From Setoptus koraiensis (Eukaryota > Animalia > Arthropoda), in NCBI GenBank assembly GCA_048013815.1, contig CM106585.1, positions 13,640,001-13,704,000 on the forward strand: a stretch of 64,000 bases of DNA. The letters are read 5' to 3'. Both the position numbers and the translations under genes were made by a program. Below, piece by piece: positions 20,513 to 47,600 of this stretch. Each line of letters starts with the position of its first letter. The stretch's first letter is position 1. The notes beneath the pieces were generated by a model that was given only the letters and a program-made list of their open reading frames with translations, was not told where the DNA came from and ran no database searches.

Positions 20513-20722
20513 AACTGGACAAATCAATATTTTGATAAAATGTAAAAAGATGTACTAGAATACACAAGACCAATAATTGATGATGATGTGGTCTTCGTAT
20601 GTGTGAATGTTTTATATGAAACAAGATATGTTAAGGTAAGGTAGGGAACCTTAGGTATGTTATCTTTCACTGGAGGCGATTCCTATTTGTGGGTAGTGAT
20701 TTTATTACATCCGATGAATGAA
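20512..20722 (-). promoter_or_regulatory. Nup133 upstream module, mirror copy of the HAT1 upstream module
   Basis: On the minus strand: 21-bp perfect block 20699..20719, 14/20 block 20662..20681, 15/16 block 20597..20612, and CAG|TT-ATG, all collinear with 21121..21332. Confidence 0.75.
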
Positions 20723-21120
20723 GTTTTTTAATAATCGATAAAACGTGGTATAAAATTTTTAAATAAGAAGATACACAGTTGTAATAATACTCTCAGGACA
20801 GGCACAGAAACTAATTGATGATTGAAGCCTGTAGAAAAGACCGCACAGATTGTGCGCACATGAAATCGTGCTCACACCTAACAAAGGTAATTGCCCACCC
20901 CACATGGCACTCATGATTTGGCGCCACTCGTAATATTTGACCATAAGGTTCTTCCAATCACTACGGCTTCATGGTCTCTACTAGATGCGACTATCAGTTA
21001 CCATTTATTTGTACTCACAACCCCATCAGTACGATAATTCACATTCACTATATGAAGGTATTGTCCCAAATTTAATCACCATTTGAACACCCCTAACATT
21101 TAACAACATTACAGAGATTA

Positions 21121-21332
21121 TTTATTCATCGGATGTAATAAAATTGTTCACTCACTCTGAGATCACCTCTATTGAATCATTGTGATTTTATTGTCAGTAA
21201 TCATTCAAAGCCTATAATAATATATCTGAGGTAACGGTTTTTTATTTTAAACATTCACATATACCCTAACGCTGACATCTATTGTATACTAACAATTTTT
21301 TGTTAAATAAATAATTTTCGGAGCCAGTCATG
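21121..21332 (+). promoter_or_regulatory. HAT1 upstream module with probable 5'UTR intron (21231..21327)
   Basis: attcatcggatgtaataaaat at 21124..21144, donor gag|gtaacg, acceptor ccag|tcATG. Confidence 0.7.
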
Positions 21333-29721: not shown

Positions 29722-32700
29722 TCATGTATGTAAACTTGTAGATAAACTTGGTCCGGCCTTACTCGTGTTGGTAGCTCTTGGCCTATAGGGTTGCTGTGAT
29801 TGACCAACTATCTCGTACAGTCTTGCTGCTTCCGTTGCAGCTTCTAAGCGTTTCAGTTTTTTCTTTGTCTTTCTCAATTGTGAATTTAAACTGAACGCTA
29901 TTGTTATAGCTAATAAGAAAACACTAGTAAATATCGAACCAACAATTATCATATTGGCTTTCCTCAGTGCCACATTCGGATCCTCTACACTACAATCGGT
30001 CTCTTTATAACCCTCCTCGCATTCGCAGAAGGCATGGTGATCATCGACTAGCCTACACTTGCCATGCTTGCAAGGTATTGTATTACAAACGTAGATACAA
30101 TATCTTTTATTATCACCGATATAATGGCGATCACATTGACAACGATAATCACCGACCTCGTTGACACATGTCGATACATTAGCCAACTCTTTACAGGCAT
30201 CAAATAGGCACTCGTTTATGTCCTCGCAAACTTCTTTGCGATAATCACCATAGTAAATATCACGTGTACCAATTGGTGTGTAACCGTATTGACAGGTACA
30301 AGTAAAATTAACTGTATCTACCATTTCACATTTAGTTTGTTTGTCGCAATAATCGAAGCTACTCTTACACGGATTGAACAATTTACGATGTTCAGCCAAT
30401 TGATCAAATGAGTCGCGTTTTATGAGTAAATTCGGTGCCATTAGATAGTATTCAGACCCCTCTTTGAATGTAAATATATATTTGGGTAGTTGTTTCTCAA
30501 GCAAAACTCTATCCGAGCGACTTTTTTCTCCCGTTGAATGCAATGTTAACTTGCAATTAATGTTAGCGTCCAATATTTCTAAATCTGTTCCATTTAAATA
30601 GTTCATTTGCATACTACTAATGGCGCTAAATGAGGGTAACCTAATGATTGGCGTTGACTTGATGTTGTAATTTTTCAATTGAGCTTCACATTCATCTACG
30701 TGAACTTTTATATTGCCTTCCATTAGGTCAAATGTACTTTTCATACTTGCAAGGGTCACCTCGCGCCAATCGACATACTCAGCGCGAAATCGATGTATCA
30801 AGGGATACCGATACGCGACACACTCTTTGTAGGCTTCCAAGCTTAGATCGGCTATGGCTGGATCACAGTAGGCAACCAGAATAGAATTAGCGGGTAATTC
30901 GTCCGATGTTATGGATTTAGGCCTGTTTTCAACTATTGGCATTGTATGATAATGCTGGTGACGCGTAGATGATTGATACAACCACATTGGATCGAAATTG
31001 CTAGGTGCCTTAAAAGTTGCATGAAACTCAACGACATCATAATTTAAGTAGCATCGTGCGTAAACATTAGCTTGGGCGGGTGTCTTTTGAGTAGTAGGGA
31101 TAATAGATGAAGAGGAATTGTATGAATCATTGACGCATTGCGAACTGGGACCGTCTTCCTCAGATCCGTGTAATACCATAGAGAAACCCGGCAAACACTC
31201 GCAGACAGATCGTCTTGAATTTATTCTTATACCATCGTGATCGTACACTATTAGACTAGTCTGGCCATAGTAGTTTGGATCCATCGTGGCAGTTCTACAC
31301 ATTCTATTAAAACGTTGGCATTCACTATTGAGCAGGTCACATTCATTAACACACCTGATTTTATCACGCGGCTTGTCTACCAAAAATTTTTTCTCAGGTG
31401 AACAGACACAAGTGTACGGTTTGATCTTCTTTGGACCATATGTGCCGCGTCTGCTGTTCGCATTAAATTGTTTGCTACTTGGTCTGTTCTGATCCCCATC
31501 GACAGACGTCTCTGGATCAGTGTCCAAATTGGCGAAGCGACTGAGTAAGAATTGCCAAGGTCTATGCAGGACTACACAAAAGGCATTCTTTTGTTCCACA
31601 CAATCCACAAAACCAATATTGCCTGGCTTGCATGGCTCTAGAATAGCATTGAAGTCTATCTTACACAGACCAGTTGATCTGTCTTGAACTAGTATGGGCT
31701 CATCGTCGCAATTGCATTCAAATGTTGGACGCCAGCTTGAAATTTTGACACTGTTTGGGCTTTCTTGATTAGAACGATCTGTTCCGTTAGTCGGTGAATA
31801 CGTTTGACTCGATGGCTTAACTTTACAACTTCCGCTTAGACAAACGTAAGTCAGAAGAGCCCGGAAGTTGTTACTAAATTTGGCAGCATCACACCAATTC
31901 AAGCATCTATCACCGACTCGTGCGTAACCTTGTCTATCGCACTCGCATTCGTACAATTTAGGAGGTCCTTCCGATTTAAGTATACAAATTTCGTTGGTAT
32001 CACAATTAAGATTGCACATCTCCTTCGTTGTGTAATAGTGGGACGTCTTTTCCCCGTCAGCATGATCTGATGAATCATCGTCACCATTTTCTGATATGTG
32101 CTTATTGTTGTTGTTGTCAGCAGCAATATGCATTTGGTCATCATTAAAATGATGATTCACAAAATCCAACGCTTCATTTATCTGTTCTTCCTCCTCCATT
32201 GGTTGATCAAAGAAGCACATATGGTCATCCACGCCTTTGTTTGTGCCAGGCTTGTAACCTGGATAACAGCTACAGTGGTAAGAATTATTATCCGTATCAA
32301 TTTGGCATAGATGTTGACATTCGTTTAGAATTGGCACTAAACAAATCACACTATCTTCTTGTAGCACGCATTTTGTGGTGCTCTTATCATGGTCGATCTG
32401 AGTTTTAGTATAACCCAATGGGCAGACACAGGTATAAAGTTGCTTGTCATAGGTTGCTATACACTTGGCCTCGCCACAAATCGATTCCTTATGGCATGGA
32501 TCATAGAGACGACAGAGACCTTTGTCCGTGGCCATATAACCAGCATTCTCATTACAAATGCACTTGCCCTCTTGACAAACTTCTGACAGCTGCTTACATC
32601 GAACACCTAAACACTTGTCGATTGGTCGACATTCGGCAATGTAAGCTGGATATTCTCTGGTATCTTTCTCACTCTTATGTTGTTTTCCGCTAGCTATTGG

Positions 32701-33528
32701 TTCGTCTGTAGATTGGCTTTGATTGTCCAACTCGTCGGAGTACGATGTCTTTGTAACTGTATCATCTATGTCAGATCTGTTCAAGTACTCAAATGATGAA
32801 GTAAATTCCCGATTGTACGAGGGCACATGATTATTGTGAACTATCAATTTGAATACAAAATACTCCTCATCTAGGCATGCGCACCGAAAGAATTTATCAT
32901 TCTTGACACATTCGCGCCCAATCTTGTGACAAATTTGATCACCGGTAAGTCCATTGGCTATTAAAGTTTTGCAAATATTTCTAGTTTGACATCTGTCACC
33001 ATAGAAGCCCTCCGGGCACTTACACTCCGCTATGCCTGGAGTTGGATGTATGCAAGTCCCCCCATTGAGACAGAAGAAGTCGTCTAGGCAATCGTCCTCG
33101 TACTGTGAGTTTGATGGACCAGTTGTGGAGGAAAAAATCTGAATATCTGGTGCAATCTTTTTTCCATCAGAGTTTGTCGAACCAATAATTCCTTCCGTAT
33201 CACTAGGCTTGTTGACTTCTTGTTCGGGTCGAATACCATTCTGTACCAGATCTAGAATCTTTGTATGGTCATCATTGGCAACGATTTTTTCCTTAAACGA
33301 ATCATCGTATGGTTGCGAATCTTTGATAATTTCTTTCTGTTGTGCATCCTGAATCTGAATGTGAGAGCAACTCAAACACTGAACAAAACCAAGAGTCAGA
33401 ATGATCACTGATTCTAGACTCAATGCCCTTTTAAATTTTTGGCTCTCAAATAATAATCTTAGCTTACACGATCTCATAAGATGATAGTGAAAATTATCAC
33501 TGATTATCGACATGTAAAAAAGATTCAT
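29722..33528 (-). CDS. Type I membrane protein with about a dozen EGF-like/cbEGF modules, intronless
   Basis: Signal-like VIILTLGFVQCLSC, EGF modules (CLNGGTC...CKCPEGFYGDRC; EDINECLFDAC...CVNEVGDYRCQC), TM helix IIVGSIFTSVFLLAITIAFSL, basic juxtamembrane tail. The start may be the later ATG at 33477. Confidence 0.85.
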   Translation of the reverse strand: MNLFYMSIISDNFHYHLMRSCKLRLLFESQKFKRALSLESVIILTLGFVQCLSCSHIQIQDAQQKEIIKDSQPYDDSFKEKIVANDDHTKILDLVQNGIRPEQEVNKPSDTEGIIGSTNSDGKKIAPDIQIFSSTTGPSNSQYEDDCLDDFFCLNGGTCIHPTPGIAECKCPEGFYGDRCQTRNICKTLIANGLTGDQICHKIGRECVKNDKFFRCACLDEEYFVFKLIVHNNHVPSYNREFTSSFEYLNRSDIDDTVTKTSYSDELDNQSQSTDEPIASGKQHKSEKDTREYPAYIAECRPIDKCLGVRCKQLSEVCQEGKCICNENAGYMATDKGLCRLYDPCHKESICGEAKCIATYDKQLYTCVCPLGYTKTQIDHDKSTTKCVLQEDSVICLVPILNECQHLCQIDTDNNSYHCSCYPGYKPGTNKGVDDHMCFFDQPMEEEEQINEALDFVNHHFNDDQMHIAADNNNNKHISENGDDDSSDHADGEKTSHYYTTKEMCNLNCDTNEICILKSEGPPKLYECECDRQGYARVGDRCLNWCDAAKFSNNFRALLTYVCLSGSCKVKPSSQTYSPTNGTDRSNQESPNSVKISSWRPTFECNCDDEPILVQDRSTGLCKIDFNAILEPCKPGNIGFVDCVEQKNAFCVVLHRPWQFLLSRFANLDTDPETSVDGDQNRPSSKQFNANSRRGTYGPKKIKPYTCVCSPEKKFLVDKPRDKIRCVNECDLLNSECQRFNRMCRTATMDPNYYGQTSLIVYDHDGIRINSRRSVCECLPGFSMVLHGSEEDGPSSQCVNDSYNSSSSIIPTTQKTPAQANVYARCYLNYDVVEFHATFKAPSNFDPMWLYQSSTRHQHYHTMPIVENRPKSITSDELPANSILVAYCDPAIADLSLEAYKECVAYRYPLIHRFRAEYVDWREVTLASMKSTFDLMEGNIKVHVDECEAQLKNYNIKSTPIIRLPSFSAISSMQMNYLNGTDLEILDANINCKLTLHSTGEKSRSDRVLLEKQLPKYIFTFKEGSEYYLMAPNLLIKRDSFDQLAEHRKLFNPCKSSFDYCDKQTKCEMVDTVNFTCTCQYGYTPIGTRDIYYGDYRKEVCEDINECLFDACKELANVSTCVNEVGDYRCQCDRHYIGDNKRYCIYVCNTIPCKHGKCRLVDDHHAFCECEEGYKETDCSVEDPNVALRKANMIIVGSIFTSVFLLAITIAFSLNSQLRKTKKKLKRLEAATEAARLYEIVGQSQQPYRPRATNTSKAGPSLSTSLHT

Positions 33529-34359
33529 TTACCAAGATATTTGGATATGTCATATAACGATGTTATGCCAGTAAACAAATGATTACTTGAAGAGCACGCT
33601 GTATAGAGAAATTTTACACAATCGCAATCGTGTAATGTTTCAATGGAATGCAGGGGCAAGATTTCGTGTGGATCTACTAAACAAAAAAGTAGCGATATCT
33701 TTCTAAACAAAAAACGTTGATTAACACCACACCATTGCCGATTAGGCGACATCAATTAACAAACACAACGATGCATGTGATGCAACGCAAAATAAACAAG
33801 TGTGGTATTAATAGGTATTATCATTTATGATCTAGAAAAAAAGAAAACTAGTATAATCATAGAGTTTCATTGTTATTTTCAGAATTTCGTTCCAAACAAA
33901 CTCCTGACAACTGTTGGCAACTAAATCAGATATGGCAACAACTGAACGGTCGCGATTCAATCTGTTATCAATTCAACTAGCTAATAACTGATATAAGCAT
34001 GGTTTGAGAGCACCTGAGCCATATTTGATATTGTTTCCATGGCGATCCTTTTTTTTTCAATGTATATTATTATATCCTCTTGCAAATAGCTTTATCAACC
34101 TAAACGAAGTTGGAGGATAGTTTGTCTGTTTGAAAGTTACACCGCGCCAATCAAGGGCACAAAAAATTAGTACAGCTGATCAGCATAAGAGGGCGCGGTT
34201 TTCTCTTCGAATGAAAAGTTGCATGTTGTGCAGCTGGACTATCTTACACCATTGCGATTGTCAATTTGAAAACACGAGTTGGTCTCTGGGTGATCTCGTC
34301 GAAAATGCTGCATTATCTTGCATTTAAATTGCGTCCGCCTTGGTTATATCTTACTGACT

Positions 34360-35817
34360 ATGGGAAATATTTCCAAAGCTCATAAAGCCATACCGTTGGT
34401 TGTTGTCCTGGGGCCAACTAATTGTGGGAAATCGCGACTTGCCATTGAGTTGGCCCAAAGATTTAGTGGCGAAATTATAAGCGCGGACTCCATGCAAATA
34501 TACAAAGGTTTGGATATTGTGACTAACAAAGTCAACAAGCAGGAACAAAAGCTAGCCAAGCATCATATGATTGACGTCGCAGATCCTTTGAAGAATTACA
34601 GTGTTGTCGACTTTCGGAATAAATCACTTAAGTTAATTGACACTTTGGTAGCTGAGAAAAAAATACCAATTATTGTCGGAGGGACACACTACTACATAGA
34701 ATCACTATTATGGAAGGAATTTCTCATACAAAGTGGAAACTCTCATGGAAATTCTAATATGATAGATAATGAATTGAAAGTTTTCAGTGATACAAGAAAC
34801 GAGCTCATTCACACAGAGGATGATATATGCCCAGAGAAAATTCTAAGCAAAACCATCTACCTGGATAGCTTCAAAGGTATTTCGTCTGACAAACTATGGA
34901 ATGTATTGGAGCAACTAGACCCGAAAAGCGCGTACAGCTACCATCCAAATGATAGGCGACGGGTACAGAGGGCCCTGCAAATCTTACAAACAGAGAAGAG
35001 GGGCATGTGTGAGGTGCTCGATGAGAAGAATATCATTGGAGAGCACTATAGTCGTGGCGGTCTCCTTAGATATGAAAATACGTGTGTATTTTGGTTGGAC
35101 TGTGATAAACAGATACTCGATAAACGCCTCGATGAAAGAGTTGACAAAATGCTCGAAAATGGACTTTTAAAGGAGTTGGAAGATTTTCATAAAGAGTATA
35201 ATTTGAATAGGACAAAAAATTCTTTACCTCATGACTACACACGTGGTGTATTTCAAACAATTGGATTCAAAGAATTCCATGACTACTTGATGTTGCAGGG
35301 CGAAGAAGAGAAGGTGTCGGAAAGAGGTCAGAATCTACTAAAAGTTTCTATAGAAAACATGAAAATGGCCACGAGAAGATATGCCAAAAAACAAAACAGG
35401 TGGATTGCGCGTAGAATGTTAGATCAAAGCACAAGAGATTTGCCTCCCATATTCAGATTAGATGTAACCAAAGTGCTGAAAGAAGAGGAAAGCTGGGATG
35501 AAGTTATAAGACCGTTGGCTTATACGGTATTAGAAAGTTTCTTGAATGAGACTAGACTACCCCATCACATACTACCATACATCGCAGAGCCTGAAAGAAA
35601 GTGGGACACTCAGAACTCGCCGGGTAAATTCTATTGCGAATCTTGTGAGAAAACTGTATTGGGAACTTACTTATGGAATATACACATTACTAGCGGTAAA
35701 CACAAAAAACGCCTAGCATCCATTCGAAAGAAATCCTTTGCGTCGCAAGAGTCGTCTCGGCAGAAAAGTCGGCAAGATGAAGCTGCCACTGATGACGCCC
35801 GAGAATGTCAATGTTGA
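34360..35817 (+). CDS. TRIT1: tRNA dimethylallyltransferase (MOD5/TRIT1), intronless
   Basis: VVVLGPTNCGKS, GEIISADSMQIYKGLDIVTNK, PIIVGGTHYY, HPNDRRRV.RAL, FQTIGFKEF, TRRYAKKQ, C-terminal matrin-type Zn finger CESC...HITSGKH. Confidence 0.95.
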   Translation: MGNISKAHKAIPLVVVLGPTNCGKSRLAIELAQRFSGEIISADSMQIYKGLDIVTNKVNKQEQKLAKHHMIDVADPLKNYSVVDFRNKSLKLIDTLVAEKKIPIIVGGTHYYIESLLWKEFLIQSGNSHGNSNMIDNELKVFSDTRNELIHTEDDICPEKILSKTIYLDSFKGISSDKLWNVLEQLDPKSAYSYHPNDRRRVQRALQILQTEKRGMCEVLDEKNIIGEHYSRGGLLRYENTCVFWLDCDKQILDKRLDERVDKMLENGLLKELEDFHKEYNLNRTKNSLPHDYTRGVFQTIGFKEFHDYLMLQGEEEKVSERGQNLLKVSIENMKMATRRYAKKQNRWIARRMLDQSTRDLPPIFRLDVTKVLKEEESWDEVIRPLAYTVLESFLNETRLPHHILPYIAEPERKWDTQNSPGKFYCESCEKTVLGTYLWNIHITSGKHKKRLASIRKKSFASQESSRQKSRQDEAATDDARECQC

Positions 35818-36369
35818 TATGTTATTAGATATGATAGTCTATTTAATAAAGAAAATAAATGTTTAAATTAAATTGCGTTTAGAGAGTTATCCTCAATTTA
35901 ATGCTCCAGTTCATGATTTATCATTCTGGATCGACTGACTCCCTTATCGTCAAGTTCTTTTCATCAAATCAGATTGACGTTAACTCGAATAGACAATCAT
36001 AGGTGATTACATCCTTGTTTCGGCCTCTCTAGTACTCCAAGTAGGAGTTCCTAGTTGGGACAGGAGATGTTCTCTCCCGTTCAAGGAAAACTGCGTTAGG
36101 TATACGGGCCGAATCGCTACGCTCATTATAGGTCGAATGCATTTTGAAAATTGCGCTACAGATGCGTGCGCACAATTGCAGACTGTAATGTTTTAGAAGC
36201 GCATGGTGCATCCGGCTTTCAACTAAAGCATCGCCGAGCCGTTCTTTCGCATGCGGTGCCATTCGGTTGTGCTTGCAGACATGAATTGTAATTTTACAGC
36301 ATTATTGAATCAGGTCTATGTCGCTGGAAACACCTAAATATTCGCTAATTTAAGGATATAAATACTACT
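35812..36369 (+). repeat. Left arm of a ~550-bp inverted duplication (TRIT1 3'UTR plus RpS11 upstream region)
   Basis: Reverse complement of 38111..38640. The core 35872..36180 differs by about 6 substitutions and one ~12-nt indel. Confidence 0.97.
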
Positions 36370-36407
36370 CAACTGCTGGTATCAATTATTAATTAGATTC
36401 CCTCAAG

Positions 36408-37334
36408 ATGTCTGAGCAGGTAAGTGGGAGCCTTTTGCCGGAGCTGGATACATATTTTAATTATCCATCTCGGTGTTGAAAATGTCGTGAAAGTTCAACC
36501 ATTCCCCTAATGTACCCCCACGTTAACAAGTAGTATCTGTATAATTGCTGAGACTAATCCTTATTATATTCTTATCTTCCACTTACAAATCCCACCTATA
36601 AATCTACGAATCACCCCACGATGGCATCTTTAGACGGAAAAGGCTTTTCAAAGACAACCAACAATCTTCATCAGTAACAAACCCTCAGATCTGAAGAAGA
36701 AGATACCCAAAAAGAAATTGAGGTACACTAGAAATGTTGGTTTAGGATTCAAAACACCACGTGACGCCATTGAAGGCAAATATGTCGACAAGAAATGTCC
36801 TTTTACTGGTAACGTCTCCATACGAGGTCGCATATTAAGAGGTATCGTGGTAAAAATGAAGATGCAGCGGACAATAGTTATCAGAAGAGACTACCTCCAT
36901 TACGTGCGCAAATACAACAGGTTTGAGAAACGCCATCGTAATATGTCCGTGCATTGCTCTCCATGCTTCAGGTAATTATTAATCATCCACCCAGTTATGT
37001 TGTTAGACCCTCAGCTTGTTTGGCTTGACATGATGAAAACACACGACGGTCTTCTGAAAGTGTATATGAGGATAAACAGTATTTTTCAGTTATCCCTGTC
37101 TGAATCAAGCCAAACATAAGTTCCTGTCTAACTTGCTTCCTAGTTGCAGTCTCTACAACAATTATCTAACTAACCCCATTCATTTCGGTCCATTCTCTCT
37201 CTATCAACAGAGACATTGCACCCGGAGACGTTGTCACTGTAGGAGAGTGCCGACCACTCAGTAAGACCGTCAGATTTAATGTTCTAAAGGTTACAAAAGC
37301 CTCTGGCGCAAAGAAACAATTTAAAAAATTCTAA
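36408..37334 (+). CDS. RpS11: 40S ribosomal protein S11 (uS17), 3 exons
   Basis: Exons 36408..36419, 36634..36971, 37211..37334. [16 protein letters not shown]...[34 protein letters not shown]...[15 protein letters not shown]. Confidence 0.98.
37017..37116 (+). ncRNA. Intronic box C/D snoRNA with two 28S rRNA guides (U35/snR73-like at D', snR38/SNORD1-like at D)
   Basis: Perfect 12-bp terminal stem (37017..37028 / 37105..37116), box C ATGATGA 37030, D' CTGA 37054, C' ATGAGGA 37066, D CTGA 37100. Guides CACGACGGTCT (37042..37052) and CAGTTATCCCTGT (37087..37099) complement the conserved LSU sequences AGACCGUCGUG and ACAGGGAUAACUG. Confidence 0.92.
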
Positions 37335-37548
37335 ATAAACATGGTCCTTGATTAAAAAAAAAACATTTCTCTCACCTTATGCATTCTCTTCCTAATTTTC
37401 ACTCATTTACGCGCTTTGAGTTTCTGGTGTGACATTCATGAGAATAATGACCAGCATTGTTTATTTTGTAGATTTCGGAATTTACAGTGGAAATTTAAGT
37501 ATACTAGATCGGTAATGTTGAGAAGTATAACGGAATAACTAAGCAGCA

Positions 37549-38076
37549 TTAATCATCCTTATCTTTGGCTCCATGTTTGAGAATTCTTGTGAACTCTAGA
37601 TAATCAAATTGACCGTTCTTATTGATCGGTGCCTCACGGTACATTTCTTCGACATCTTCGTCACTGAAACGATCGCCCATGGTTGTGAGTAACTCTCGGA
37701 GGCGTTCCTCATGAATGAAACCCCCATTATCTTCATCGAAGCATGCAAATGCGTTCTTTATTACGTCTTCGGGATCTGTCCCTTGTAATCTCTCCCCAAA
37801 TAGAGTGAGGAACATGGTGAAATTGATTGGACCAGGGGCCTCATTCATCATGGACTCTAGAAACTGGTCGTCCGGGTTCTTACCCAAAGATGCCAACATA
37901 TCATGAAGATCCTCCTTGTCGATGAATCCATCTCTGTTTTGATCTATCATATTGAAGGCCTCTTTGAATTCCTGTATTTGTGCTTGGTCGAACATGGCAA
38001 ATACATTGGATGTTGCCCTTTGGGCTCTTTGCTTGTGTCGGGTGACACCACGACCCTTGGCTTTACGGCTGGCCAT
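37549..38076 (-). CDS. sqh: Non-muscle myosin regulatory light chain, intronless CDS
   Basis: [41 protein letters not shown]...[14 protein letters not shown]...[11 protein letters not shown]. Confidence 0.98.
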
Positions 38077-38110
38077 TGATCCTGTTAATAGCGGAATCTT
38101 ATAGCGGAAT

Positions 38111-38640
38111 AGTAGTATTTATATCTTTAAATAAGCAAATATGTAGGTGTTTCCAGCAAAATAGACCTGATTTAATGATGCAAACACTATCGAATGACGC
38201 TGCATTCGAAAGGACGGCTCAGCGATGCTTTAGTTGAAAGCCAGATGCACCATATACGCCTTTAAAAAAAAAACAATACAGCTTGCAATTGTGCGCACGC
38301 ACCTGTAGCGCAATTTTCAAAATGCATTTGACCTATAATGAGCGTAGCGATTCGGCCCGTATACCTAACGCAGTTTTCCATGAACGGGAGAGAACATCTC
38401 CTGTCCCAACTCTGGAGTACTAGAGAGGCCGAAACAAGGATGCAATCACCTATGATTGTCTATTCGAGTTAACGTCAATCTGATTTGATGAAAAGAACTT
38501 GACGATAAGGGAGTCGGTCGCTCCAGAATGATAAATCATGAACTGGAGCATTAAATTGAGGATAACTCTCTAAACGCAATTTAATTTGAACATTTATTTT
38601 CTTTATTAAAGAGGCTATCTAATCCAATAACATATCACCA
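38111..38640 (-). repeat. Right arm of the inverted duplication, directly upstream of sqh
   Basis: Reverse complement matches 35812..36369, including the AATAAA of the TRIT1 3'UTR and gatataaatactact at the inner end. Confidence 0.97.
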
Positions 38641-40899
38641 CAGACTTAAAATTTGTCAGTGGACATAAGCCAGTATATGTATTATTATTCATTGTTTGCC
38701 TGGCTCATCGGGCAATCGGATAATGATCCGTCGGGAAGTCGAAAGAAAGTCGACAGAACTCTCACTGAGAGCTCACCTTGTGATTGGCGAAAGATGACCC
38801 ACTCACCTTTCGAATCGACCATTATTATGATTGACCATCGAGGTTTCGAAGCGTCAGAGCATATATCGGAGCAGGCATCGCATAGTATATGCTTCCAACA
38901 CTGTTACGCAAAGCGCTTTTTGGGCGGGGGAGACTATTGATTCGGTGGTGCCGAGTGTGACATTGAGAGGGTCGAAGGCGCGAGATTAGGTACTGCAAGC
39001 GACGATCTGGTAAGTTAGGCATTTGAAGAGCGACCCGTTAGCAATCAATTGTGCTACATTTAGCTCAATATGTTGGTTAATAGATCAATAAAGTTTACTG
39101 CAAGTCTAGACAATGTTAATATGTTCTCATGTTTGTATTCAAGAATACAAACATGAAAACAAGCCGCAACTGCTCGGAAAAACTCGCCTCATTCTGTTAG
39201 GAGGATTCGGAGTGGCCGAAGCCACAACACATAACGAAACATATGAAACATGGAACATAACGAAAAGAAAGAGACAACAACACATTGAATTAAGAAGGTT
39301 AATTTCTATGACGAAACAGTATGGCTGAATAAATTAACTGCCGCGATTTCAGCGAACGAAATATATATAACAAAATTTATATTTGTGTGTGACGGTGTTG
39401 TGCCAGCAGCATCTTGTGTCCGGATCAACCTAATTTCAAGCAACAAAAACAACAGCAGCAGCAACAACATTTGCAGTATAGTGGTGTTCCACATTCTTGC
39501 CTAACAGTGCAACACATTAGTCATTGGTTGCGGTTGTGGTCGTAGTTTGCTCAAGATGTGTATCGTCTGACATTGGTTCCTAGAAACTTGATTAGTTTGT
39601 GATGCCATGCAGCAGTGACTGACACCGACACATTTGTACACTATCATGTTTGTACTAACTGGTTATGTCAATCCTATGTGTCAGAGATGGAGGATAGCAT
39701 CAACATAACTAGTCTGGCCAGTCGAGTCTGTACCCGCTGCATTCCGACATGAGACGTTGCTGGCAAGCCTTTGACAAAATAGAAATCAAGTTCAACGGTT
39801 CCAATGTGTGAGCCTAATAAGGAAAATACGGTTTTTCATATGACCTGCTGGCGAGCATGTTGATTAACTGCAAATAGATGAACTTTTCCAATGGACAGTT
39901 GACCAATACACACACACGGTTGTTATCTGTGTCAACTCGGCACACAGTTTGAGGTGCAAATGTAGATAAATAAATAACAGAGAATATAGATATCGAAATA
40001 GACCTTGAATAATGATGGAATTTCGACCACATTCAGATCAATTAGTAGCGACTGAATCCACACAGATGCGACAAAAGAGACATTAGTCGTAACGACGCTT
40101 GCTGGTCAGTAAACAGATTGTGATCTCGAATTGGTTCCCGTGTTTGCGATAACTTTGCAGCGATGTGGCCAACTAGTTTGAACATGCCTGACATATAGTG
40201 CTCGCCTCGAGTTGGTTGCAACTCCACAATCACTGCCACATATTTTGGAGGTTTCAGGCAATGGGACCAATCGCAATAGAATCTGCAGAAAGTTGCGCCT
40301 CAAACACTTTCTCTACAGCTCCCTTGGCATTGATTGAAAATCCCCAAGGTTATCACGTAGCAACACAAGACGGCCTTCTCATCGTGTCAGTCACATGTAC
40401 ATTGTTTTGTTTCCACACAACATTCCACTTGTCAGTGTAGGGACTGGCCTGAAAAAATAAACAGCGCATAGGTGCGTTTTGCCTGAAAGATGTTGGCAAG
40501 AAGTAACAATGAACGCCAGCGAACGCATTCATCTCCGATGTTCTTGGAATTACATTGTATTGAACACTGGACCGGCACTAAAAAACCCATTTTATCGGCA
40601 GTGTCCGCATGCCAATACCGGAATGTATCACTACTCTATGGCAGTGTGCAGTTGATGAACTGAACAAGGAACGATGGCCGGTTTTGATCATGTTTTGCTT
40701 GTCACAATTATACAACCAACAGCACTCACAGGTTACATTTGGCCGACTGATTAGCTGCGCCAATCATCATTTGGTCTAAATGGCCGAAGGCTATCACACT
40801 TTTACGATTTTGTGTGTGTTTATAATACTCGTGCCTCATTCCAGCGACTCATCTCACAATGAAATCTTCTTACAAGAAAAAAAAAACAGAACATTATTG

Positions 40900-43800
40900 C
40901 ATAAGTGTGTGTGTGTGTGTCTCTCAAGTCAATACACAGCTAGAAATGGAAATTGAAATGGAATGAAATAGGATAAAACTAATTTGAATGTTGCAGAGCC
41001 TTTAGTCTTTATTGCCTTCACTCTAGCTGTCTAATATCCAGTTCTTACAACTGCGCCGTGATTAGGCACCATGATTGACGCGCATTCAATGGAGAGTAGT
41101 CTCGGCAATAACGGGACTCAAAAAGGTGAAAGGGGTACACCTCCTGTGTGGTGCGGACTTACCATTGGACGACGAACTAGTTTAAGTAATGGAGCGGACA
41201 ACTGGTGTTGTTGTTGAAGTAAAGAAACAGAATGGACACAGTCAGACATGGGCTGTCCATGTGAGCACTTGTTGAGCAAACATAGCTGATTATAGCTGTT
41301 GAAGTTGAGAGCATTGTATGTATAAATATATATTTATTTATCTAAATATATAAATATATATTTGTATACTATACATATATGTAAACTAAGATTGTTTAAG
41401 GATCCTGATTAATTATAATACTAATACTGCTGCTAAGATCATTCTAGACCGTGGTAATACCGTGCCGCAACAGGTGGTGCATGGAGCAGCCTGGAAAAGT
41501 TGATTAGGAGGGATGTGAGGAGATGTGAAGAGTAGCACAGGTAGAAAGCGAACAGATAATGCAGCATAATACAGTGGAGCAGGCCAATACTCAAATAGCC
41601 TCTCTCTCTCACCACTGATCTTTTGCATCGACGCTGTTGTTGCTGTTGTTTAATGATTGGCTTTTGTGGAAATAAATTCAAGAGAGATACTGAAAGTTTA
41701 CACCAATCGCACATTGCCAATACTGACCACAGCCAGACTGCGACTATTTAATGTTGCTGTTGTTGAATATCGAAAGATGTGCCATTGGATGCTTGAGGCA
41801 AATGTAAACATGGCAACAACTCAGAACCAATTGATCGATTGTTGCCCGGCCGCTTGTTTGCTCATGTTGCTGTTGTTGTGTGTTATTTATTCATTTATTT
41901 ATTTATCTATCAAGCTAGAGCACACATACACACGCTCGTTCGTTAGCGTTATTCTTTGTCTGACGACGACGAGCAACGAGCGAGCTGCGAAACGCAAAGG
42001 ATTCCATGAAGTAGTTTCAGGAGGCGCTGGCTACAGCAACTAATGGCTTTCAAAATCCTTATAATCACTTATTAACTTTGCGTAGCCTCTATCACCAACT
42101 TGTATGTGTGTGTGAGTGAGTCGTCTCACCTCTCATTGGGCCAGCAACAACAGCAACAGCAACAACAACAGCAACAACAACAACGGCTCGAAGTTTAGCT
42201 AGCCGGCTAGTTAGCGCTCGGCGAGCTGGCTCGGTTGGCGCCGTTGCTATTGATTGCGCCGTTAGCTGATGATGAGTTATTTATTCCTCTATTATCATTG
42301 CTGCCACTATCATCACTGAACACATTGCTACAACTCCTCAGTCGATAGCTGACCAGTCGGCTACCCGGCACCGTTATTAGTACCGTTGCCACCGTTGCAA
42401 GCTCAACGAGCTAACGGCTCGCCAGGTATGACGCCAACGCCGCCAGAACAAGTCGCATGCTGCTGGCTCAGTGGTGGTGGTGGTGGTGGTGGTGGTACTG
42501 CTGCTGCTGGTGATGATGATACCAGTGGAGGCTGTGTTGATTGTGTGAGCATGGTCAGTTTGATTATCGCGCACGGTACATATTAGCTGGACATCATAGT
42601 GTAACGGATAATGATAACCGGCGCCACTTGAGAGCATCATTAAAACTAAGCCTTATATTCTTTTAAGCGAAGGAATATTTCCCTGATGCCACATCGACAA
42701 TTGCTGCGTCCAGCAACTGGCGAGCTCAGTAAGCGCCGCCGCTGTGGTTGTTGCTGCTGCTGCTGTTGCTTCGCATGCCATCAGATTAATGCCGGCCGGC
42801 CGGCCTGTTGCTCTGCTGGTTGGAGGGACGGAGAGGGAATAAAGGAGAAAGAAAAAAGTTTAGAGCGAGCAAGGGTGATGCTGACCTCATATCTAATCAT
42901 AATCGTGTTGCGTTTCTCCATCCTGAACTGGCCGGCCAGCTACCAGTTGTTGTGTATCATGCAACAAGCTGATTTGCGCAAGCTATTCATAATGGGGCTC
43001 AAAGTGAATTTGAGCAAAGAGTATAGAGTGTGGCTGCTGCTGTTGCCACTAATGGTGGCGCTCAAAAGTGGCCGAGCGAGACAGAGACACAGGGAGAGAG
43101 AGAGAGAGGGATAGGGACAGTGAGAGAAACCTATCGGCTAATTTCTACTTTCAGCATGGCATATGGTCGCGCAACTAGCCGATGGTGCGCTCGCCAAATC
43201 AAAACCAACAACCGACGACCAGCGACCAGAGTGACCAGCAACAACCGGCAACGGTACGACCAACAAACAACAACGTTCCACAGAAGCAACGGTTGATGGT
43301 CAATAATGTATCGAATATGATTGGCGATGATGAGGGGCAAAGAAGAAGGACAAAAATGAAAATAATCGCCTATGACCATCAGTCATCTAATAGTCTCAAT
43401 GGTCAACCCGGTGGACTTAGGTCTCAGCGACTAAACTACCACTAATAGGCGCTCGGCTGGCGAGCTGGCAAGCTAGCCGGCAACACTCTGTGAGCTAGCT
43501 TCTCTCTGCGTCTCATCGCCAGCCTCGTTGATTATTTAACAGCACTCCACTCCCTTTTGATTGGAACTCATCTGATTCAATGATGCTGCCGCTGCTGCTA
43601 CACTCACACTAGAAAACTACTTCTTCATCTAATTGGGCTCTCTCTCTCTCGCTCGCTCGCTCATTTCTCCTTCTCTCTCTCTCACTCGCTCTCGAAGCGG
43701 GGCTTTATCCTGTGATATCGTTCGCAATCAAACAGTGTTGTGTCAATGTTGTGTGAACAGTGAATGAATCCACAAACATTCACTTGTTGTATATTTACAT

Positions 43801-44400
43801 ATCAATAATCTGTTTATTTATTACTACCGCTTTGAATAGGCAACTTTGAATCACAGGCACATACACAAGAGACAGTGAATGAACGAGTGAGCAAAAGTAA
43901 GTTTAGCTAAGCAAAGAAACAAAACAGGAACCGTACAGCAAACAAACGGTGCAACAGCAACTTGCATAAGCACATAAATCGATTAAAGGGCTGCAAGAAA
44001 TTAATGCCAACTAGTTAACCAACGAACGCACAGCATTATAAGTTTAAATTTTATTAGTTACTACGGTTTGCTCACTCTCAATCTCATCATCATTTCAAGT
44101 CTCTCATAGTTGTAGTGCAACTGATTTATATCCACCACATGGTCATCGATAGTAGATCGCCAAAAAGTAGTTGATAGATCAGTGCAAATAAATCAGCAAT
44201 CGACGCACACAGTTTGCATCAGATTGCGACAATTAAGGTCATCCACCACACTCACTGAACTGTCCTCTGCCTGCAGACATCAGCCGAACCATTACATCGA
44301 CCGAGCGAGCCTACAATGAATCAAGCCATCCGTAATTAGCTAATTAGATAGCTAATAAACACACACACACACACAAGTTTGCCAACAGCAACAACAAGAA
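40900..44400. repeat. Microsatellite-rich non-coding region upstream of ABCA
   Basis: (TG)n near 40905, AT-rich run 41325..41385, (CAA/CAG)n 42142..42184, (TGG)n 42471..42496, (GA)n near 43095, (CT/CTCG)n near 43640, (CA)n near 44360. Confidence 0.85.
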
Positions 44401-44653
44401 TTGTTTGTTAAACACACTAAATAATATCACACCAGAGTATAAGAATTGAACAGACTCGTGCAACTAGCTTGCTGCAATGAAATGTCTCCACAAGACGCAC
44501 CATGTCAACTTCTAAATCAATCCGCTACATGACTGACAGCTGCCTCCAATTTACAACCGCTCACAAACATAGCAGTGTTTAATATAAATAAACACTAATC
44601 AATCAACACATTGACATCGAGCAACAAATCCAACACACACATCAAGCCAAAAG

Positions 44654-47600
44654 ATGTCGTCCTTTTTAGGCCAATATTGGCTGTTGCTACAGCACAAGGT
44701 GTTACTCAGGCGCCGGCAACCCATTATAATGGCCATGGAAATCTTCTGGCCGGCAGCTGTATTTCTGGCTGTACTTATTGTCAGATTACAATTTCCACCA
44801 GAGCAAGTGTCAACATGTTACTATAACACCAAGGCGATGCCTAGCGCCGGACCAGTGACATTCCTACAATCGTTAGTGTGCAATTTAGACAATCCTTGTA
44901 TAAAAAGCAATCAATATCAAGAGATTCCACTATATCCTGATTCAAAAATACATCAGATGGTTGATCAACTGAATCCATTATTGACAGATACAACTGTTGC
45001 AAATGTTATTCGCGAGATGCCCAAAGGTATTAGATTCATTGCCACAATTGTGGATGCAATATCTCAAAGTGACATGAGGCATCTACTAGAGCATGGTGTA
45101 CCTATAAATAATGTCATCCGTGATAATGGCTCACCTAGGCTGATTGAATATATCAAACGTTCTCTATTAGAGCAAGCAAATTTGCTCGCCACAACTACTA
45201 CCAATAACACATGGACAGCATCTACCACAACAATAGGTGCAACACATTCAATAACAACGTCGCCTTCTAAGACACCGACAGACCTCGAAGCCATCGCAAC
45301 TGAGGCAGACGTGCCCACGACAACAGCATCTTACGGCGAACCATCACGTGACACAAGTGTCACATCAACCACAAAACCAACTTCTTTGTCTACTGTGACA
45401 ACAGAATCAAATATAGAATTAACTACACAGCAACAGGGGCTCTCCAAAGATGACAGTGAGAATACACAAGACGACGGAATGTTAAGCCCGAACTCTAGAA
45501 TGAAGCGTTCTCTGCCTACAGCGTTCCTATTGAGGCCAGACGAGTCTGCTGAAATAGCAAAATTACTGGTCAATATCCCTTTAGATTTGATCAATTTGAG
45601 TCAATTATCCGAAGAAATCAAACGATCAACCACCATGGCCTCAGCAACGCCTCAGACATTTTCAAATGGTCAAGAGTCGGCAACAAGCAACATTTCTAGC
45701 AGTGGGCCAAAATCACTTAAAGAAATCATTTGTTCGCCAGCAAGTCTAGCCAATCACATCAAGCTGTTCAATGGTGATAGCATCAGTCAAACAACTAATT
45801 TAAGTGAAATATTCCTAAGTGAACAAATATCGCTAGAGAAATTCTCACAGTCATTGTGTCTATTGAATGACAACCAAATAGATCATTTTATATTGATGAT
45901 TCAAGATGAATTTGATTTTGTTAAAATACTTCAATTGCTCTCGATAATGTTACAACGGATCAGTCAAGACGATATATTGGTCAGAATAGATGAGATCCAA
46001 ACTATGATTGAAACCATTGATAAATCCAACATATTTACATCATTCAGTGGCCTGATAACATCTTCGTGGGCAAAAGAGTTACTCAATTTAGTGAGAGGTT
46101 TTAGTTCGGGAGAAATCGAAATGAAAACTCTGCTCAAGATTGCAAGCGATATTGAGCCTCTATTGAGCAGAGTCTCATTGGTTGTTGGTGGCTCTAGTGC
46201 AAATGCGCCACAAAAGGGCAAGAGTAACAGTGGCGGAAATTCTATATTGGCGTCGTATATCGGCGAGACAAACAGCAGCACTAGCTTCGATGAGTCCTCA
46301 ACTCTAATACCTATAACAACTAGCACTGAAACGTCGTCAACGCTTTCCTCGGTGCAACCAACGAAAATACCCGCAACTACTGAACTTGCAGACATCGACG
46401 GAGAGCTGGGTGATAATCTTAACGACGATATATGGAGTAAATCTGTGTTAGAAAAAGAGGTGATGCTATCAGCTCCAAGTGACGCTTCCTCATCTATATT
46501 AACTTTTGATAGGATGCACCCAAAACAGGGTCTACCTGAAAATGTGAGACAGCAACATACAACCAAACAACAGAATTCAAGCAAATATGAACAAGATGAC
46601 GATAAAAATTTCGGCCTCATTGATCTAGGTAGTGTCGATCCTTATCCGAATGTTCGCAATCTTCAAAACCGACAGGAACAACAAAAGGAACAAGACAAGA
46701 GACCGAGAACCGACAGACTGTCGAAATTGGCTCATGACATAGTGCTAGAATCGAAGGTAAACGATCAGGCGCAGAGACAACAACAGCAATACCATAATAG
46801 ACGCCAGCGACGCGATGTAAACTTAAGCGAAGTGGAGTCAACAAGAGATGGCAACAACTCGCAGAATGATAACAGCAACAACTTTTCCGATGTTCTCAGA
46901 ACGATGATTCCTTTGGATCTTCACCAATTGAAACTATTGCAAGCAGGAATGTGGGGAGCCGCAGTTGTTACAACAGGCTCATCGTACGGGGGCACATCAG
47001 ACAGTCCACCAAACGGAGATCACAATCAGAATGAGCATCAATCATCAGTGCTGAACAACAAACACAATAATGATAATAATAATCTCCTTAATGAGATAGA
47101 CTCAGGCGTGGGTGCCGGCCTGGAGTCTAGGATACTATCTAAGGTTGTATCGAACATGGACAAGTGGATCGATATGGTGGAAAAGTTTACTGTTACTCCT
47201 AAATGGACGTCACTGATGAGAATATTCCAGGGTACAGAGGCCATTTTGGGCATGTTGGCTCAAACACAAAACTCGCCGAATGGCGCCACATCCGGCAGCG
47301 TTAATGATCAGCAGCAAGCAATGATTTCAACTAATACAAGCGAATTTGAGCGTCTTATGCAACGATTGCCCGGGAGAGTGCAGACACTGACATCGGCACT
47401 CAATCATTTATTCCCCTGGCATGTGTGGCCCTGGAACAATGTAGACCTGTATAAGACAGTGGACACCTTCTTAAGCCACGGTATATTTGCATTCAACCAG
47501 ACAACTCTGGGTCCGAATAGGAGGATAGACTATCTGGCTGACTTGATAAATACATTGCAAAAGTCGCTATCGTTTGGCACGTTTCCTCGTAAATGCGTCG

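What the first reader, a model, noticed from the sequence alone, without database searches (positions are those of the whole stretch)
35812..38640. ~550-bp inverted duplication gives RpS11 and sqh the same upstream sequence
The arms (35812..36369 and 38111..38640) enclose the convergent RpS11 and sqh genes. The left arm starts at the TRIT1 stop codon, so the copy carries the TRIT1 poly(A) region, and the arms end 38 and 34 bp before the two ATGs. Both keep a TCT-like motif (ttctttcg 36242; tcctttcg 38214 minus) and gatataaata. This fits a staggered-break inversion (A-P-[C'B']-P'-D) in which one gene captured the other's promoter. The arms could also let the 1.7-kb RpS11+snoRNA+sqh cassette flip without changing either gene's upstream context.
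Basis: partly seen in the sequence, partly recalled or inferred. Interest (0 to 1): 0.85.

Follow-up and report, generated by a model that had tools for sequence, protein, structure and literature searches.

The report
Myosin light-chain gene borrowed RpS11's promoter
In this gall-mite-like genome a flipped 550-bp copy of the ribosomal protein S11 promoter now sits in front of the neighbouring myosin regulatory light-chain gene, whose mRNA starts inside the copy; it is a clean, datable natural case of an old essential gene swapping its promoter.

Summary
Arms 35807-36369 and 38111-38645 form a 92%-identical inverted repeat with three indels. It is the only long repeat in the 64-kb window. Two independent DNA data sets reproduce it at two-copy depth, so it is neither an assembly artefact nor a dispersed transposon.

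The arms flank convergent RpS11 (+) and non-muscle myosin regulatory light chain (MRLC/sqh, -).

- **Transcription:** Spliced RNA contigs, 100% identical to the window, begin at 36241 (RpS11) and 38200 (MRLC). Both ends lie inside the arms, next to homologous TCT-like motifs. No RNA lies further upstream of MRLC.
- **Polarity:** The closest relative (about 80% DNA identity, same gene order) has no repeat. Only its RpS11 upstream region matches the arms. Three conserved RpS11-upstream motifs recur in more distant mites. So the left arm is RpS11's native promoter and the right arm is a younger copy.
- **Origin:** The simple staggered-break inversion model fails, because the nearest outgroup has the same orientation and the left arm keeps both ancestral junctions. 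The two-gene cassette is, however, inverted relative to five sister-clade species.
- **Untested:** Present-day flipping of the cassette.

Unchecked scan notes report similar mirror duplications elsewhere in this genome. Verdict: a real new instance of promoter capture, of moderate interest.

The parts
34360..35817 (+). tRNA isopentenyltransferase (TRIT1) CDS in a single exon. Its stop codon (35815-35817) lies just inside the left arm.
   Evidence: ORF list; Pfam IPPT E = 5e-60; homologues named tRNA dimethylallyltransferase.
35807..36369 (+). Left arm. This is the ancestral TRIT1-RpS11 intergenic region: the TRIT1 3' flank with AATAAA hexamers, the RpS11 promoter, and most of the RpS11 5' leader.
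   Evidence: Inverted repeat. The inner ~300 bp aligns with the RpS11 upstream region of relative L001 (control score 235 against a shuffle maximum of 28).
36164..36172 (+). GCGTGCGCA (NRF1-like) motif, conserved upstream of RpS11 in the window, L001 and L002 (near-match in L005). Retained in the right arm at 38292-38300.
   Evidence: Motif scan. The factor name is an inference from the motif's resemblance only.
36208..36215 (+). GCATCCGG (ETS-like) motif, conserved 178-203 nt upstream of the RpS11 ATG in all four species compared. In the right arm (38241-38248) it is mutated to GCATCTGG.
   Evidence: Motif scan; the C>T at 36213/38243 is polarised as right-arm-derived.
36242..36249 (+). TCT-like initiator TTCTTTCG, a 7 of 8 match to YYC+1TTTYY. 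The RpS11 RNA contig begins at 36241.
   Evidence: X8 record 18; consensus from PMC5580651.
36357..36364 (+). TATAAATA, found 44-53 nt upstream of the RpS11 ATG in the window, L001 and L002 (TATAAGA in L005). The right-arm copy is at 38116-38123. It may mark a proximal TATA-driven start.
36241..37344 (+). RpS11 transcript seen in RNA: exons 36241-36419, 36634-36971 and 37211-37344. The CDS starts at 36408 with its stop at about 37332 (157 aa). Both introns are GT..AG. Intron 2 holds a C/D snoRNA-like sequence.
   Evidence: Spliced contig with 0 mismatches; joined translation; Pfam.
37475..38200 (-). MRLC (sqh orthologue) transcript seen in RNA. It is unspliced, with CDS 37549-38076. Its first 90 nt or more (38111-38200) are right-arm sequence.
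   Evidence: X8 record 20: 726 nt, 0 mismatches, 0 gaps, across 13 arm-diagnostic substitutions and the 24-bp deletion. X8 depth is zero from 38276 to 41200.
38111..38645 (-). Right arm: the derived inverted copy of the left arm, 34 nt upstream of the MRLC ATG. It carries a TCT-like TCCTTTCG (38214-38207), a 24-bp deletion in the leader, an 8-bp T-run insertion, and a 12-bp difference whose direction is unresolved.
   Evidence: It is absent from L001 and from five sister-clade loci.
38077..38110 (-). A 34-nt unique spacer between the right arm and the MRLC ATG. It contains an 11-nt tandem repeat (ATTCCGCTAT-) and shows no significant similarity to the RpS11 spacer.
   Evidence: global alignment no better than shuffles.

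Best explanation
After this species separated from its closest sampled relative, the roughly 560-bp segment from the TRIT1 stop codon to 38 nt before the RpS11 ATG was copied in inverted orientation. That segment holds the TRIT1 3' flank, RpS11's native promoter, and most of its 5' leader. The copy landed 34 nt upstream of the ATG of the neighbouring, convergently oriented non-muscle myosin regulatory light-chain gene.

MRLC is now transcribed from this copy. Its mRNA begins inside the right arm at about the position homologous to the RpS11 start, beside a TCT-like initiator, so both mRNAs share a homologous 5' leader.

The copy has since drifted. It lost one conserved ETS-like motif and has a 24-bp deletion in the leader.

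Shown: the repeat and its copy number, the direction left to right, its absence in relatives, and transcript 5' ends in both arms. Inferred: that the copy is MRLC's only or main promoter, that the TCT-like C is the true +1, and how the copy was made. The copy could have arisen by template switching or ectopic repair, or by a staggered-break inversion followed by a flip back through the new repeat. These routes leave the same final structure.
For: - **Repeat is real.** It is 92.3% identical over 522 sites and unique in the window. Independent DNA runs X5 and X6 reproduce all four junctions at mirror positions, with the arm core at 2x depth.
- **No repeat in the closest relative.** L001 has an identical MRLC protein, 82% TRIT1 identity, and the same order EGF-TRIT1-RpS11-MRLC, but no inverted repeat. 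Only its TRIT1-RpS11 spacer aligns to the arms. A sensitive search finds no remnant copy upstream of its MRLC.
- **The arm is RpS11's own promoter.** GCGYGCGCA, GCATCCGG and TATAAATA sit at similar distances upstream of RpS11 in the window, L001, L002 and L005. In L002 and L005 RpS11 is not next to TRIT1. The TRIT1-MRLC spacers of those species lack these motifs.
- **Right arm is the derived copy.** The 24-bp and 8-bp indels are derived in the right arm. Polarised substitutions are 16 right-derived and 11 left-derived.
- **Age.** Arm divergence is JC 0.05-0.17, against 0.62 at MRLC four-fold sites between the two species.
- **RNA.** Run X8 gives an RpS11 contig at 36241-36417|36632-36968|37208-37344 and an MRLC contig at 37475-38200. 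Both have 0 mismatches, and nothing lies upstream of 38200 out to 41200.
Against: - Transcript ends come from assembled contigs of a single RNA run. They are not CAGE or 5'RACE data. Contigs carry no strand, and their depth is averaged.
- With a start at the TCT-like site, the RpS11 leader would be about 165 nt long with three upstream ATGs. That is unusual for a ribosomal protein mRNA. A conserved TATAAATA about 50 nt before the ATG suggests a possibly stronger proximal start that lies outside the arm for RpS11.
- The TCT-like motif is not conserved at the homologous position in L001.
- The leader part of the arms is more diverged (15%) than the outer part (4.6%; Fisher p = 0.0017). A single neutral duplication does not predict this. 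It may mean gene conversion, in which case the repeat could be older than it looks.
- The ancestral MRLC upstream sequence cannot be aligned between species, so insertion cannot be told from replacement.
Confidence: 0.72

Rival explanations
1. The repeat is the footprint of a staggered-break inversion (Ranz et al. 2007) of the RpS11+MRLC cassette. There are two versions. In the first, it formed recently in this lineage, and homologous recombination between the new arms then flipped the cassette back. In the second, it formed when the cassette was inverted in the common ancestor of this species and L001, was then kept similar by gene conversion here, and was lost in L001.
For: - The arms are non-repetitive, about 550 bp long, and flank a short segment. 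This matches the published signature: 59% of Drosophila inversions show it, with duplications of 46 bp to 1.9 kb.
- The very cassette they flank is inverted relative to five sister-clade species, which have TRIT1(+)-MRLC(+)-RpS11(-).
- Divergence along the arms is uneven, which could reflect conversion tracts.
- TRIT1 C-termini differ between the two clades.
Against: - The nearest outgroup without the repeat has the same orientation as the window, and the left arm keeps both ancestral junctions. A single staggered-break event therefore cannot give the observed state.
- In every segment the arms are more similar to each other than either is to L001, and L001 has no remnant copy. The ancient version thus needs both conversion and complete loss.
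- The arms contain the TRIT1 stop codon joined to RpS11 promoter motifs. That composite exists only in the RpS11-first arrangement.
- The polarity of the between-clade inversion is unresolved.
Confidence: 0.2
2. The right arm is a passive, functionally irrelevant duplicated fragment. MRLC is driven by elements in the 34-nt spacer or by an undetected upstream promoter. The RNA over 38111-38200 is then minor, or comes from spurious initiation in the copy.
For: - Only one RNA run was laid.
- An AG lies 5 nt before the MRLC ATG, in both the window and L001, and could be a splice acceptor.
- The copy has lost a conserved ETS-like motif.
Against: - The MRLC contig is continuous from the CDS through the spacer into the arm. 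There is no spliced alternative, and RNA depth is zero from 38276 to 41200 in that run.
- A 34-nt spacer is too short to hold a promoter.
- MRLC is an essential housekeeping gene and must be expressed from somewhere close by.
Confidence: 0.06
3. The arms are terminal inverted repeats of a transposon or foldback element, or an assembly artefact such as a palindromic chimera.
For: The structure is an inverted repeat flanking a short segment, and nothing more.
Against: - Copy number is two by k-mer depth in two independent DNA sets.
- The left arm is orthologous to a single-copy intergenic region in a relative.
- The arms differ by 40 substitutions and three indels. Each variant is confirmed in RNA, contiguous with its own gene.
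- No other copy exists in the 64-kb window.
Confidence: 0.02

Closest known systems
Inverted duplications at inversion breakpoints (staggered-break model; Ranz et al. 2007, PMC1885836)
   Same: Inverted duplicates of unique sequence, a few hundred bp long, flank a short chromosomal segment. They diverge by substitutions and small deletions, and can give a gene a new neighbour's regulatory DNA.
   Different: The enclosed segment is not inverted relative to the closest genome that lacks the duplication. One arm keeps both ancestral junctions while the other has two new ones. The inversion seen against the sister clade is older than the repeat, unless gene conversion is invoked.
Promoter capture or regulatory-region duplication, as described for new genes, retrogenes and chimeric genes (my background knowledge, not checked in papers here)
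   Same: A gene acquires the promoter and 5' leader of another gene by DNA duplication and is transcribed from it.
   Different: The recipient is not a new duplicate. It is an ancient, single-copy, highly conserved housekeeping gene: its protein is 100% identical to the relative's. Its own upstream region was displaced. The donor is the adjacent ribosomal protein gene, 1.7 kb away, and the copy is inverted.
TCT-motif (polypyrimidine initiator) core promoters of ribosomal protein genes (Parry et al. 2010; review PMC5580651)
   Same: Both arms carry a 7 of 8 match to YYC+1TTTYY. The RNA 5' ends fall 3 nt upstream of the motif C (RpS11) and 12 nt downstream of it (MRLC). The donor is a ribosomal protein gene.
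   Different: The motif is not conserved at the homologous site in the closest relative. The resulting leader is long and contains upstream ATGs. A conserved TATAAATA lies downstream, whereas Drosophila TCT promoters use TRF2 rather than TBP. Factor dependence is untestable here.
Other mirror-image duplications noted in this genome by the scan (PAN3/Sirt1, s1-303156; OPA3, s1-318807)
   Same: They are described as local inverted duplications that hand one gene's upstream region to a neighbour in the same genome.
   Different: Those involve head-to-head genes sharing one spacer. Here the genes are convergent and the copies lie on the two outer sides. I did not check those notes.

Membership tests
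Staggered-break inversion with breakpoint duplications | Inverted duplicates of non-repetitive sequence lie at the two ends of a segment, in the size range of tens of bp to about 2 kb | tested here: met
   The arms are 563 and 535 bp, present at two copies, and flank 1.74 kb.
Staggered-break inversion with breakpoint duplications | The enclosed segment is inverted relative to the closest arrangement that lacks the duplication | tested here: not met
   L001 has no repeat and shows TRIT1-RpS11(+)-MRLC(-), exactly as in the window. Only the more distant sister clade is inverted.
Staggered-break inversion with breakpoint duplications | Each duplicate keeps one ancestral junction and has one novel junction | tested here: not met
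   The left arm is continuous with both TRIT1 and RpS11, as in L001. Neither flank of the right arm has a counterpart in L001.
Promoter capture by segmental duplication | The donor sequence is the native promoter of another gene, shown by orthology | tested here: met
   The left arm aligns to the RpS11 upstream region of L001. Three motifs are conserved upstream of RpS11 across the four species compared; GCGYGCGCA is only a near-match in L005.
Promoter capture by segmental duplication | Transcripts of the recipient gene initiate within the copy | tested here: met
   The MRLC RNA contig at 37475-38200 is colinear and runs 90 nt into the right arm, with all arm-specific variants. No RNA lies upstream. 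The evidence is a contig end, not a mapped cap.
Promoter capture by segmental duplication | The copy is absent in outgroups, so the state is derived | tested here: met
   No inverted repeat is found in L001, L002, L005, L007, L008 or L010.
TCT-motif ribosomal protein core promoter | YYC+1TTTYY overlaps the transcription start | tested here: inconclusive
   Both arms have 7 of 8 matches. The RNA contig ends lie 3 nt upstream of the motif C (RpS11) and 12 nt downstream of it (MRLC). The cap site is not mapped, and the motif is absent at the homologous site in L001.
TCT-motif ribosomal protein core promoter | Transcription is TRF2-dependent and TBP-independent | not testable with these tools
   This needs biochemistry. 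A conserved TATAAATA about 110 nt downstream of the TCT-like site may mark a separate start.
Transposable or foldback element with terminal inverted repeats | Multiple dispersed copies in the genome | tested here: not met
   The arm core has depth 177 against about 100 (X5), and 10.7 against 5.5-8 (X6), which indicates two copies. No other copy exists in the window.
Transposable or foldback element with terminal inverted repeats | The arms are not orthologous to host single-copy sequence | tested here: not met
   The left arm is orthologous to the TRIT1-RpS11 spacer of L001.

The most novel reading that the evidence does not exclude
Local inverted duplication may be a recurrent, genome-wide route of promoter exchange in this streamlined, intron-poor gall-mite genome. 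This locus would be one instance, alongside the PAN3/Sirt1 and OPA3 mirror duplications noted elsewhere in the same genome. Here it would have placed an actomyosin regulator under a ribosomal-protein-type (TCT/TOP-like) start, coupling MRLC output to the translation-machinery programme. The arms may still allow the two-gene cassette to flip, as it has done at least once between mite clades.
Probability: 0.2. Interest if true: 0.75.

Novelty: new member of a known kind. Interest (0 to 1): 0.5.

Why it matters
Promoter turnover in old, essential, single-copy genes is rarely caught with the donor, the recipient, the direction and the approximate age all visible. This locus shows all four. The MRLC protein is 100% conserved between two species, yet one of them has replaced everything upstream of position -34 with a copy of the neighbouring ribosomal protein promoter and leader, and RNA shows the copy in use.

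That makes the locus a natural experiment in three ways:
- How much promoter identity matters for a housekeeping gene.
- How a duplicated promoter decays or adapts. It has already lost one conserved motif and 24 nt of leader.
- Whether a TCT/TOP-like start brings ribosomal-protein-style regulation to a cytoskeletal gene.

The locus also shows that a TRIT1-MRLC-RpS11 gene trio has stayed together across a deep mite clade while its two-gene core was inverted. If the similar notes elsewhere in this genome hold up, small inverted duplications may be a characteristic mode of regulatory change in miniaturised genomes.

Tried and rejected
- **Rfam.** A gathering-threshold scan of 30000-45000 found no known RNA family, so no known RNA gene was detected in the arms.
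- **Native MRLC promoter remnant.** I looked to the right of the right arm by aligning window 38077-39200 to the 1.1 kb upstream of MRLC in L001. Only a 27-nt block at about 39066-39092 matches. Insertion therefore cannot be told from replacement.
- **Native MRLC promoter motif.** I tried to define one from five sister-clade TRIT1-MRLC spacers. They are too diverged. Only a loose GCCTTTG recurs, and it is absent from the window and L001.
- **Homology beyond the arm ends.** I tested the 38-nt and 34-nt spacers and the outer flanks. None aligns better than shuffled sequence. The duplication therefore did not demonstrably reach the ATG.
- **Decayed second arm.** I searched L001 and inverted self-matches in five other loci. 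Nothing was found.
- **Polarity of the cassette inversion.** In a TRIT1 tree the window and L001 are sister to all MRLC-first species, so the ancestral orientation stays open.
- **Closer relatives.** None closer than L001 is in the protein database. The next TRIT1 hit is 51% identical.
- **Long reads.** No raw long reads were on offer. All runs are held as k=31 contigs, which cannot phase the two arms or show cassette orientation.
- **A second mirror module.** The one noted at 20510-21332 contains only 24-25-nt inverted repeats. It is a different scale of feature, and I did not pursue it.


Full report
**1. The observation**

The repeat finder on 34500-40000 returns four collinear inverted blocks that together form one interrupted inverted repeat:
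- 35807-36039 / 38413-38645 (233 nt, 95%)
- 36042-36194 / 38270-38422 (153 nt, 93%)
- 36203-36277 / 38179-38253 (75 nt, 87%)
- 36299-36369 / 38111-38181 (71 nt, 89%)

A MAFFT alignment of the two arms, scored by script, gives 482 identical of 522 aligned sites (92.3%). There are three indels: 12 bp at 36041-36052, an 8-bp T-run at 38262-38269, and 24 bp at 36275-36298. With a 12-nt seed and a 60-nt minimum, this is the only repeat of either orientation in all 64 kb. Neither the inner spacers (38 and 34 nt before the two ATGs) nor the outer flanks align better than shuffled sequence. The boundaries are therefore sharp.

**2. The genes**

- The ORF ending at 35817 is a tRNA isopentenyltransferase (Pfam IPPT, E = 5e-60; named homologues).
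- RpS11 has three exons. Pfam Ribosomal_S17_N and S17 match exon 2. The GT..AG introns at 36420-36633 and 36972-37210 are confirmed by spliced RNA contigs. The joined CDS is an intact 157 aa.
- The minus-strand ORF 37549-38076 is a 175-aa EF-hand protein. Its best solved relatives are smooth and non-muscle regulatory light chains MYL9 and MYL12B (E = 1e-92), well ahead of striated-muscle light chains (E about 1e-52). It is therefore the sqh/MRLC orthologue.
- The organism is not an insect. The nearest named TRIT1 is from the eriophyoid mite Aceria tosichella (51%), followed by spiders, ticks and oribatid mites. A TRIT1 tree puts the window in a strongly supported clade with Aceria. The single-exon genes fit the intron-poor eriophyoid genomes described in PMC7738191. 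An earlier scan note also calls it a gall-mite genome.

**3. Is the repeat real DNA, and how many copies are there?**

All public runs are held as k=31 contigs, so no read spans both arms. The contig graph is still diagnostic.

In X5, a different study at depth about 100:
- A single 2203-nt contig covers 36132-38332. It runs from inside the left arm, through RpS11 and MRLC, into the right arm.
- The arm core is one 285-nt contig at depth 177.
- The outer flank contigs end at 35894 and begin at 38558. These are exact mirror positions, as are 36132 and 38332.

X6, another sample at low depth, shows the same pattern: 10.7 for the core against 5.5-8 beside it.

The arm therefore exists twice in the genome, in inverted orientation, at this locus. 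It is not a dispersed element. The 40 substitutions and three indels between the arms also rule out a palindromic assembly chimera.

**4. Transcripts**

Run X8 is filed under another organism label, but it yields spliced contigs with zero mismatches. It is therefore RNA containing this species.
- The RpS11 contig is 36241-36417 | 36632-36968 | 37208-37344.
- The MRLC contig is 37475-38200, unspliced.
- X8 depth is zero from 38276 to 41200.

The MRLC contig crosses 13 arm-diagnostic substitutions and the 24-bp deletion without a mismatch. The right arm, not the left, is thus transcribed in continuity with the MRLC CDS.

No 31-mer is shared between the arms around these ends, so the ends are not graph breaks.

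The ends also fall beside homologous motifs. Position 36241 is 3 nt upstream of the C of TTCTTTCG. Position 38200 is 12 nt downstream of the homologous C (38212) of TCCTTTCG. Both octamers match 7 of 8 positions of the Drosophila TCT consensus YYC+1TTTYY (PMC5580651).

Caveats:
- These are contig ends, not mapped caps.
- The implied leaders carry an upstream ATG 11 nt from the end. The RpS11 leader has three upstream ATGs.
- A conserved TATAAATA about 50 nt before the ATG could drive a second, proximal start.

**5. Which arm is the original?**

An exact-protein look-up of MRLC returned one 12-kb contig from another species, L001. Its MRLC protein is identical, its TRIT1 is 82% identical, and its DNA is about 80% identical. 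Its gene order is the same: EGF protein, TRIT1, RpS11, MRLC.

L001 has no inverted repeat. Its TRIT1-RpS11 spacer aligns to the inner ~300 bp of the arms (Smith-Waterman score 235 against a shuffle maximum of 28). The 1.1 kb upstream of its MRLC matches neither its own RpS11 promoter nor the window's right arm.

The 24-bp segment and the short T-run state are shared by the left arm and L001, so those two indels arose in the right arm.

In more distant relatives (L002, L005) RpS11 lies on the far side of MRLC from TRIT1. Its upstream region still carries the same three motifs at similar distances:
- GCGYGCGCA at about -240 (near-match in L005)
- GCATCCGG at -178 to -203
- TATAAATA or TATAAGA at -44 to -53

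Their TRIT1-MRLC spacers lack these motifs.

So the arm sequence is RpS11's own promoter, and the copy in front of MRLC is derived. In the copy the ETS-like GCATCCGG has become GCATCTGG.

**6. Age**

MRLC differs between the window and L001 only at synonymous sites. Four-fold sites are 42% different (JC 0.62); NG86 dS is 1.09 and YN00 dS is 0.51.

The arms differ by JC 0.05 in the outer 250 bp, 0.08 in the promoter, and 0.17 in the leader. In each segment the arms are more alike than either is to L001. The copy is therefore younger than the species split, unless it has been homogenised.

The divergence gradient is significant (outer against leader, Fisher p = 0.0017). It is unexplained. Possible causes are gene conversion in the outer part, relaxed or adaptive change in the two leaders, or both. 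Derived changes are spread over both arms: 16 right, 11 left, 13 unpolarised.

**7. Origin, and the staggered-break idea**

The model of Ranz et al. (PMC1885836) predicts an inverted segment flanked by inverted duplicates, with each duplicate having one ancestral and one new junction. Against the nearest genome without the repeat there is no inversion, and the left arm has both ancestral junctions. The simple model therefore fails.

The arms are mirror-collinear (outer pairs with outer, inner with inner). They also join the TRIT1 stop codon to RpS11 promoter motifs. The duplication must therefore have been made on an RpS11-first chromosome.

There is a twist. Five sister-clade species (L002, L005, L007, L008, L010) have TRIT1(+)-MRLC(+)-RpS11(-). 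That is the same two-gene cassette in the opposite orientation, and none of them has a repeat. The cassette has thus been inverted at least once in this clade. The TRIT1 tree does not say which state is ancestral.

Three histories remain:
- (a) A recent inverted insertional duplication, by template switching or ectopic repair.
- (b) A recent staggered-break inversion, followed by a flip back through recombination between the new arms.
- (c) An old breakpoint duplication, kept similar by gene conversion here and lost in L001.

Histories (a) and (b) give identical end states and the same functional outcome. History (c) needs two extra assumptions. My estimates are (a) about 0.5, (b) about 0.25, (c) about 0.1.

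**8. What it does**

The best-supported reading is that MRLC is now expressed from a copy of the RpS11 promoter and carries a homologous 5' leader.

Whether this couples MRLC to ribosomal-protein-type transcriptional (TCT/TRF2) or translational (TOP-like) control is inference only. The outer part of the copy also places AATAAA hexamers in the MRLC sense upstream of the new promoter. These could stop read-through from the right, but no transcription from that side is seen in X8.

**9. Comparison and novelty**

The locus resembles breakpoint duplications, but it fails two of their defining features here. It is best filed as promoter capture by a local inverted segmental duplication. The unusual points are that the recipient is an ancient, single-copy, fully conserved housekeeping gene, and that the donor is its ribosomal protein neighbour.

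I found no paper describing this locus. The literature searches were limited to the inversion model, eriophyoid genomes and the TCT motif.

Earlier first-stage notes report similar mirror duplications elsewhere in this genome. I did not check them, and they do not raise my score.

Noticed in passing
window 34360-38076 versus L002, L005, L007, L008, L010: The gene trio TRIT1-MRLC-RpS11 is kept together across a deep mite clade (TRIT1 only about 47% identical). The convergent MRLC+RpS11 pair is inverted between the (window, L001) pair and five sister-clade species. The polarity is unresolved.
   Followed up: partly
window 37017-37116 (RpS11 intron 2); L005 about 10640-10710; L002 about 10925-11000: A C/D-box snoRNA-like sequence (TGATGA ... 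CACGACGGTCT.CTGA ... CAGTTATCCCTGTCTGA) is conserved in the same RpS11 intron in the distant relatives. The Rfam gathering scan of 30000-45000 reported nothing there.
   Followed up: partly
window 36251-36337 and L001 homologous site: An upstream ORF starting ATGCGGTGCC (peptide MRCHS...) lies in the RpS11 leader. It is shared by the window and L001. The right-arm copy keeps an upstream ATG at the same place with a changed peptide.
   Followed up: partly
window 38083-38109: The short spacer between the right arm and the MRLC ATG contains an 11-nt tandem duplication (ATTCCGCTAT-, two copies 2 nt apart, read on the minus strand). It may be a repair scar at the junction.
   Followed up: no
window 38263: Both independent DNA runs (X5, X6) carry two extra A in the A-run here relative to the window. 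This is either a homopolymer length error in the assembly or a polymorphism.
   Followed up: no
window 37044 / 37273: One low-depth X6 contig joins these two places on opposite strands, inside RpS11 intron 2 and exon 3. It is probably a library or assembly chimera, and X5 does not show it.
   Followed up: no
window 35807-36369 versus 38111-38645: Arm divergence rises from the outside inwards: 4.6% outer, 7.2% promoter, 15.2% leader (p = 0.0017). This is the reverse of the between-species conservation of the same segments, and it is unexplained.
   Followed up: partly
window 20597-21264: The region flagged by another note as mirror-image modules between Nup133 and HAT1 holds only short inverted pairs: 24 nt at 96% and 25 nt at 84%. 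This is far smaller than the repeat studied here.
   Followed up: partly
window 39260-39599 and 40657-41001: Two noncoding-looking blocks to the right of the right arm are conserved with L001 at 71-74%. They show no RNA in run X8, and their nature is unknown.
   Followed up: no
window 29722-33528: A 1268-aa ORF in a single exon encodes an EGF-repeat protein with a C-terminal transmembrane-like stretch. It is conserved at 76% in L001.
   Followed up: no
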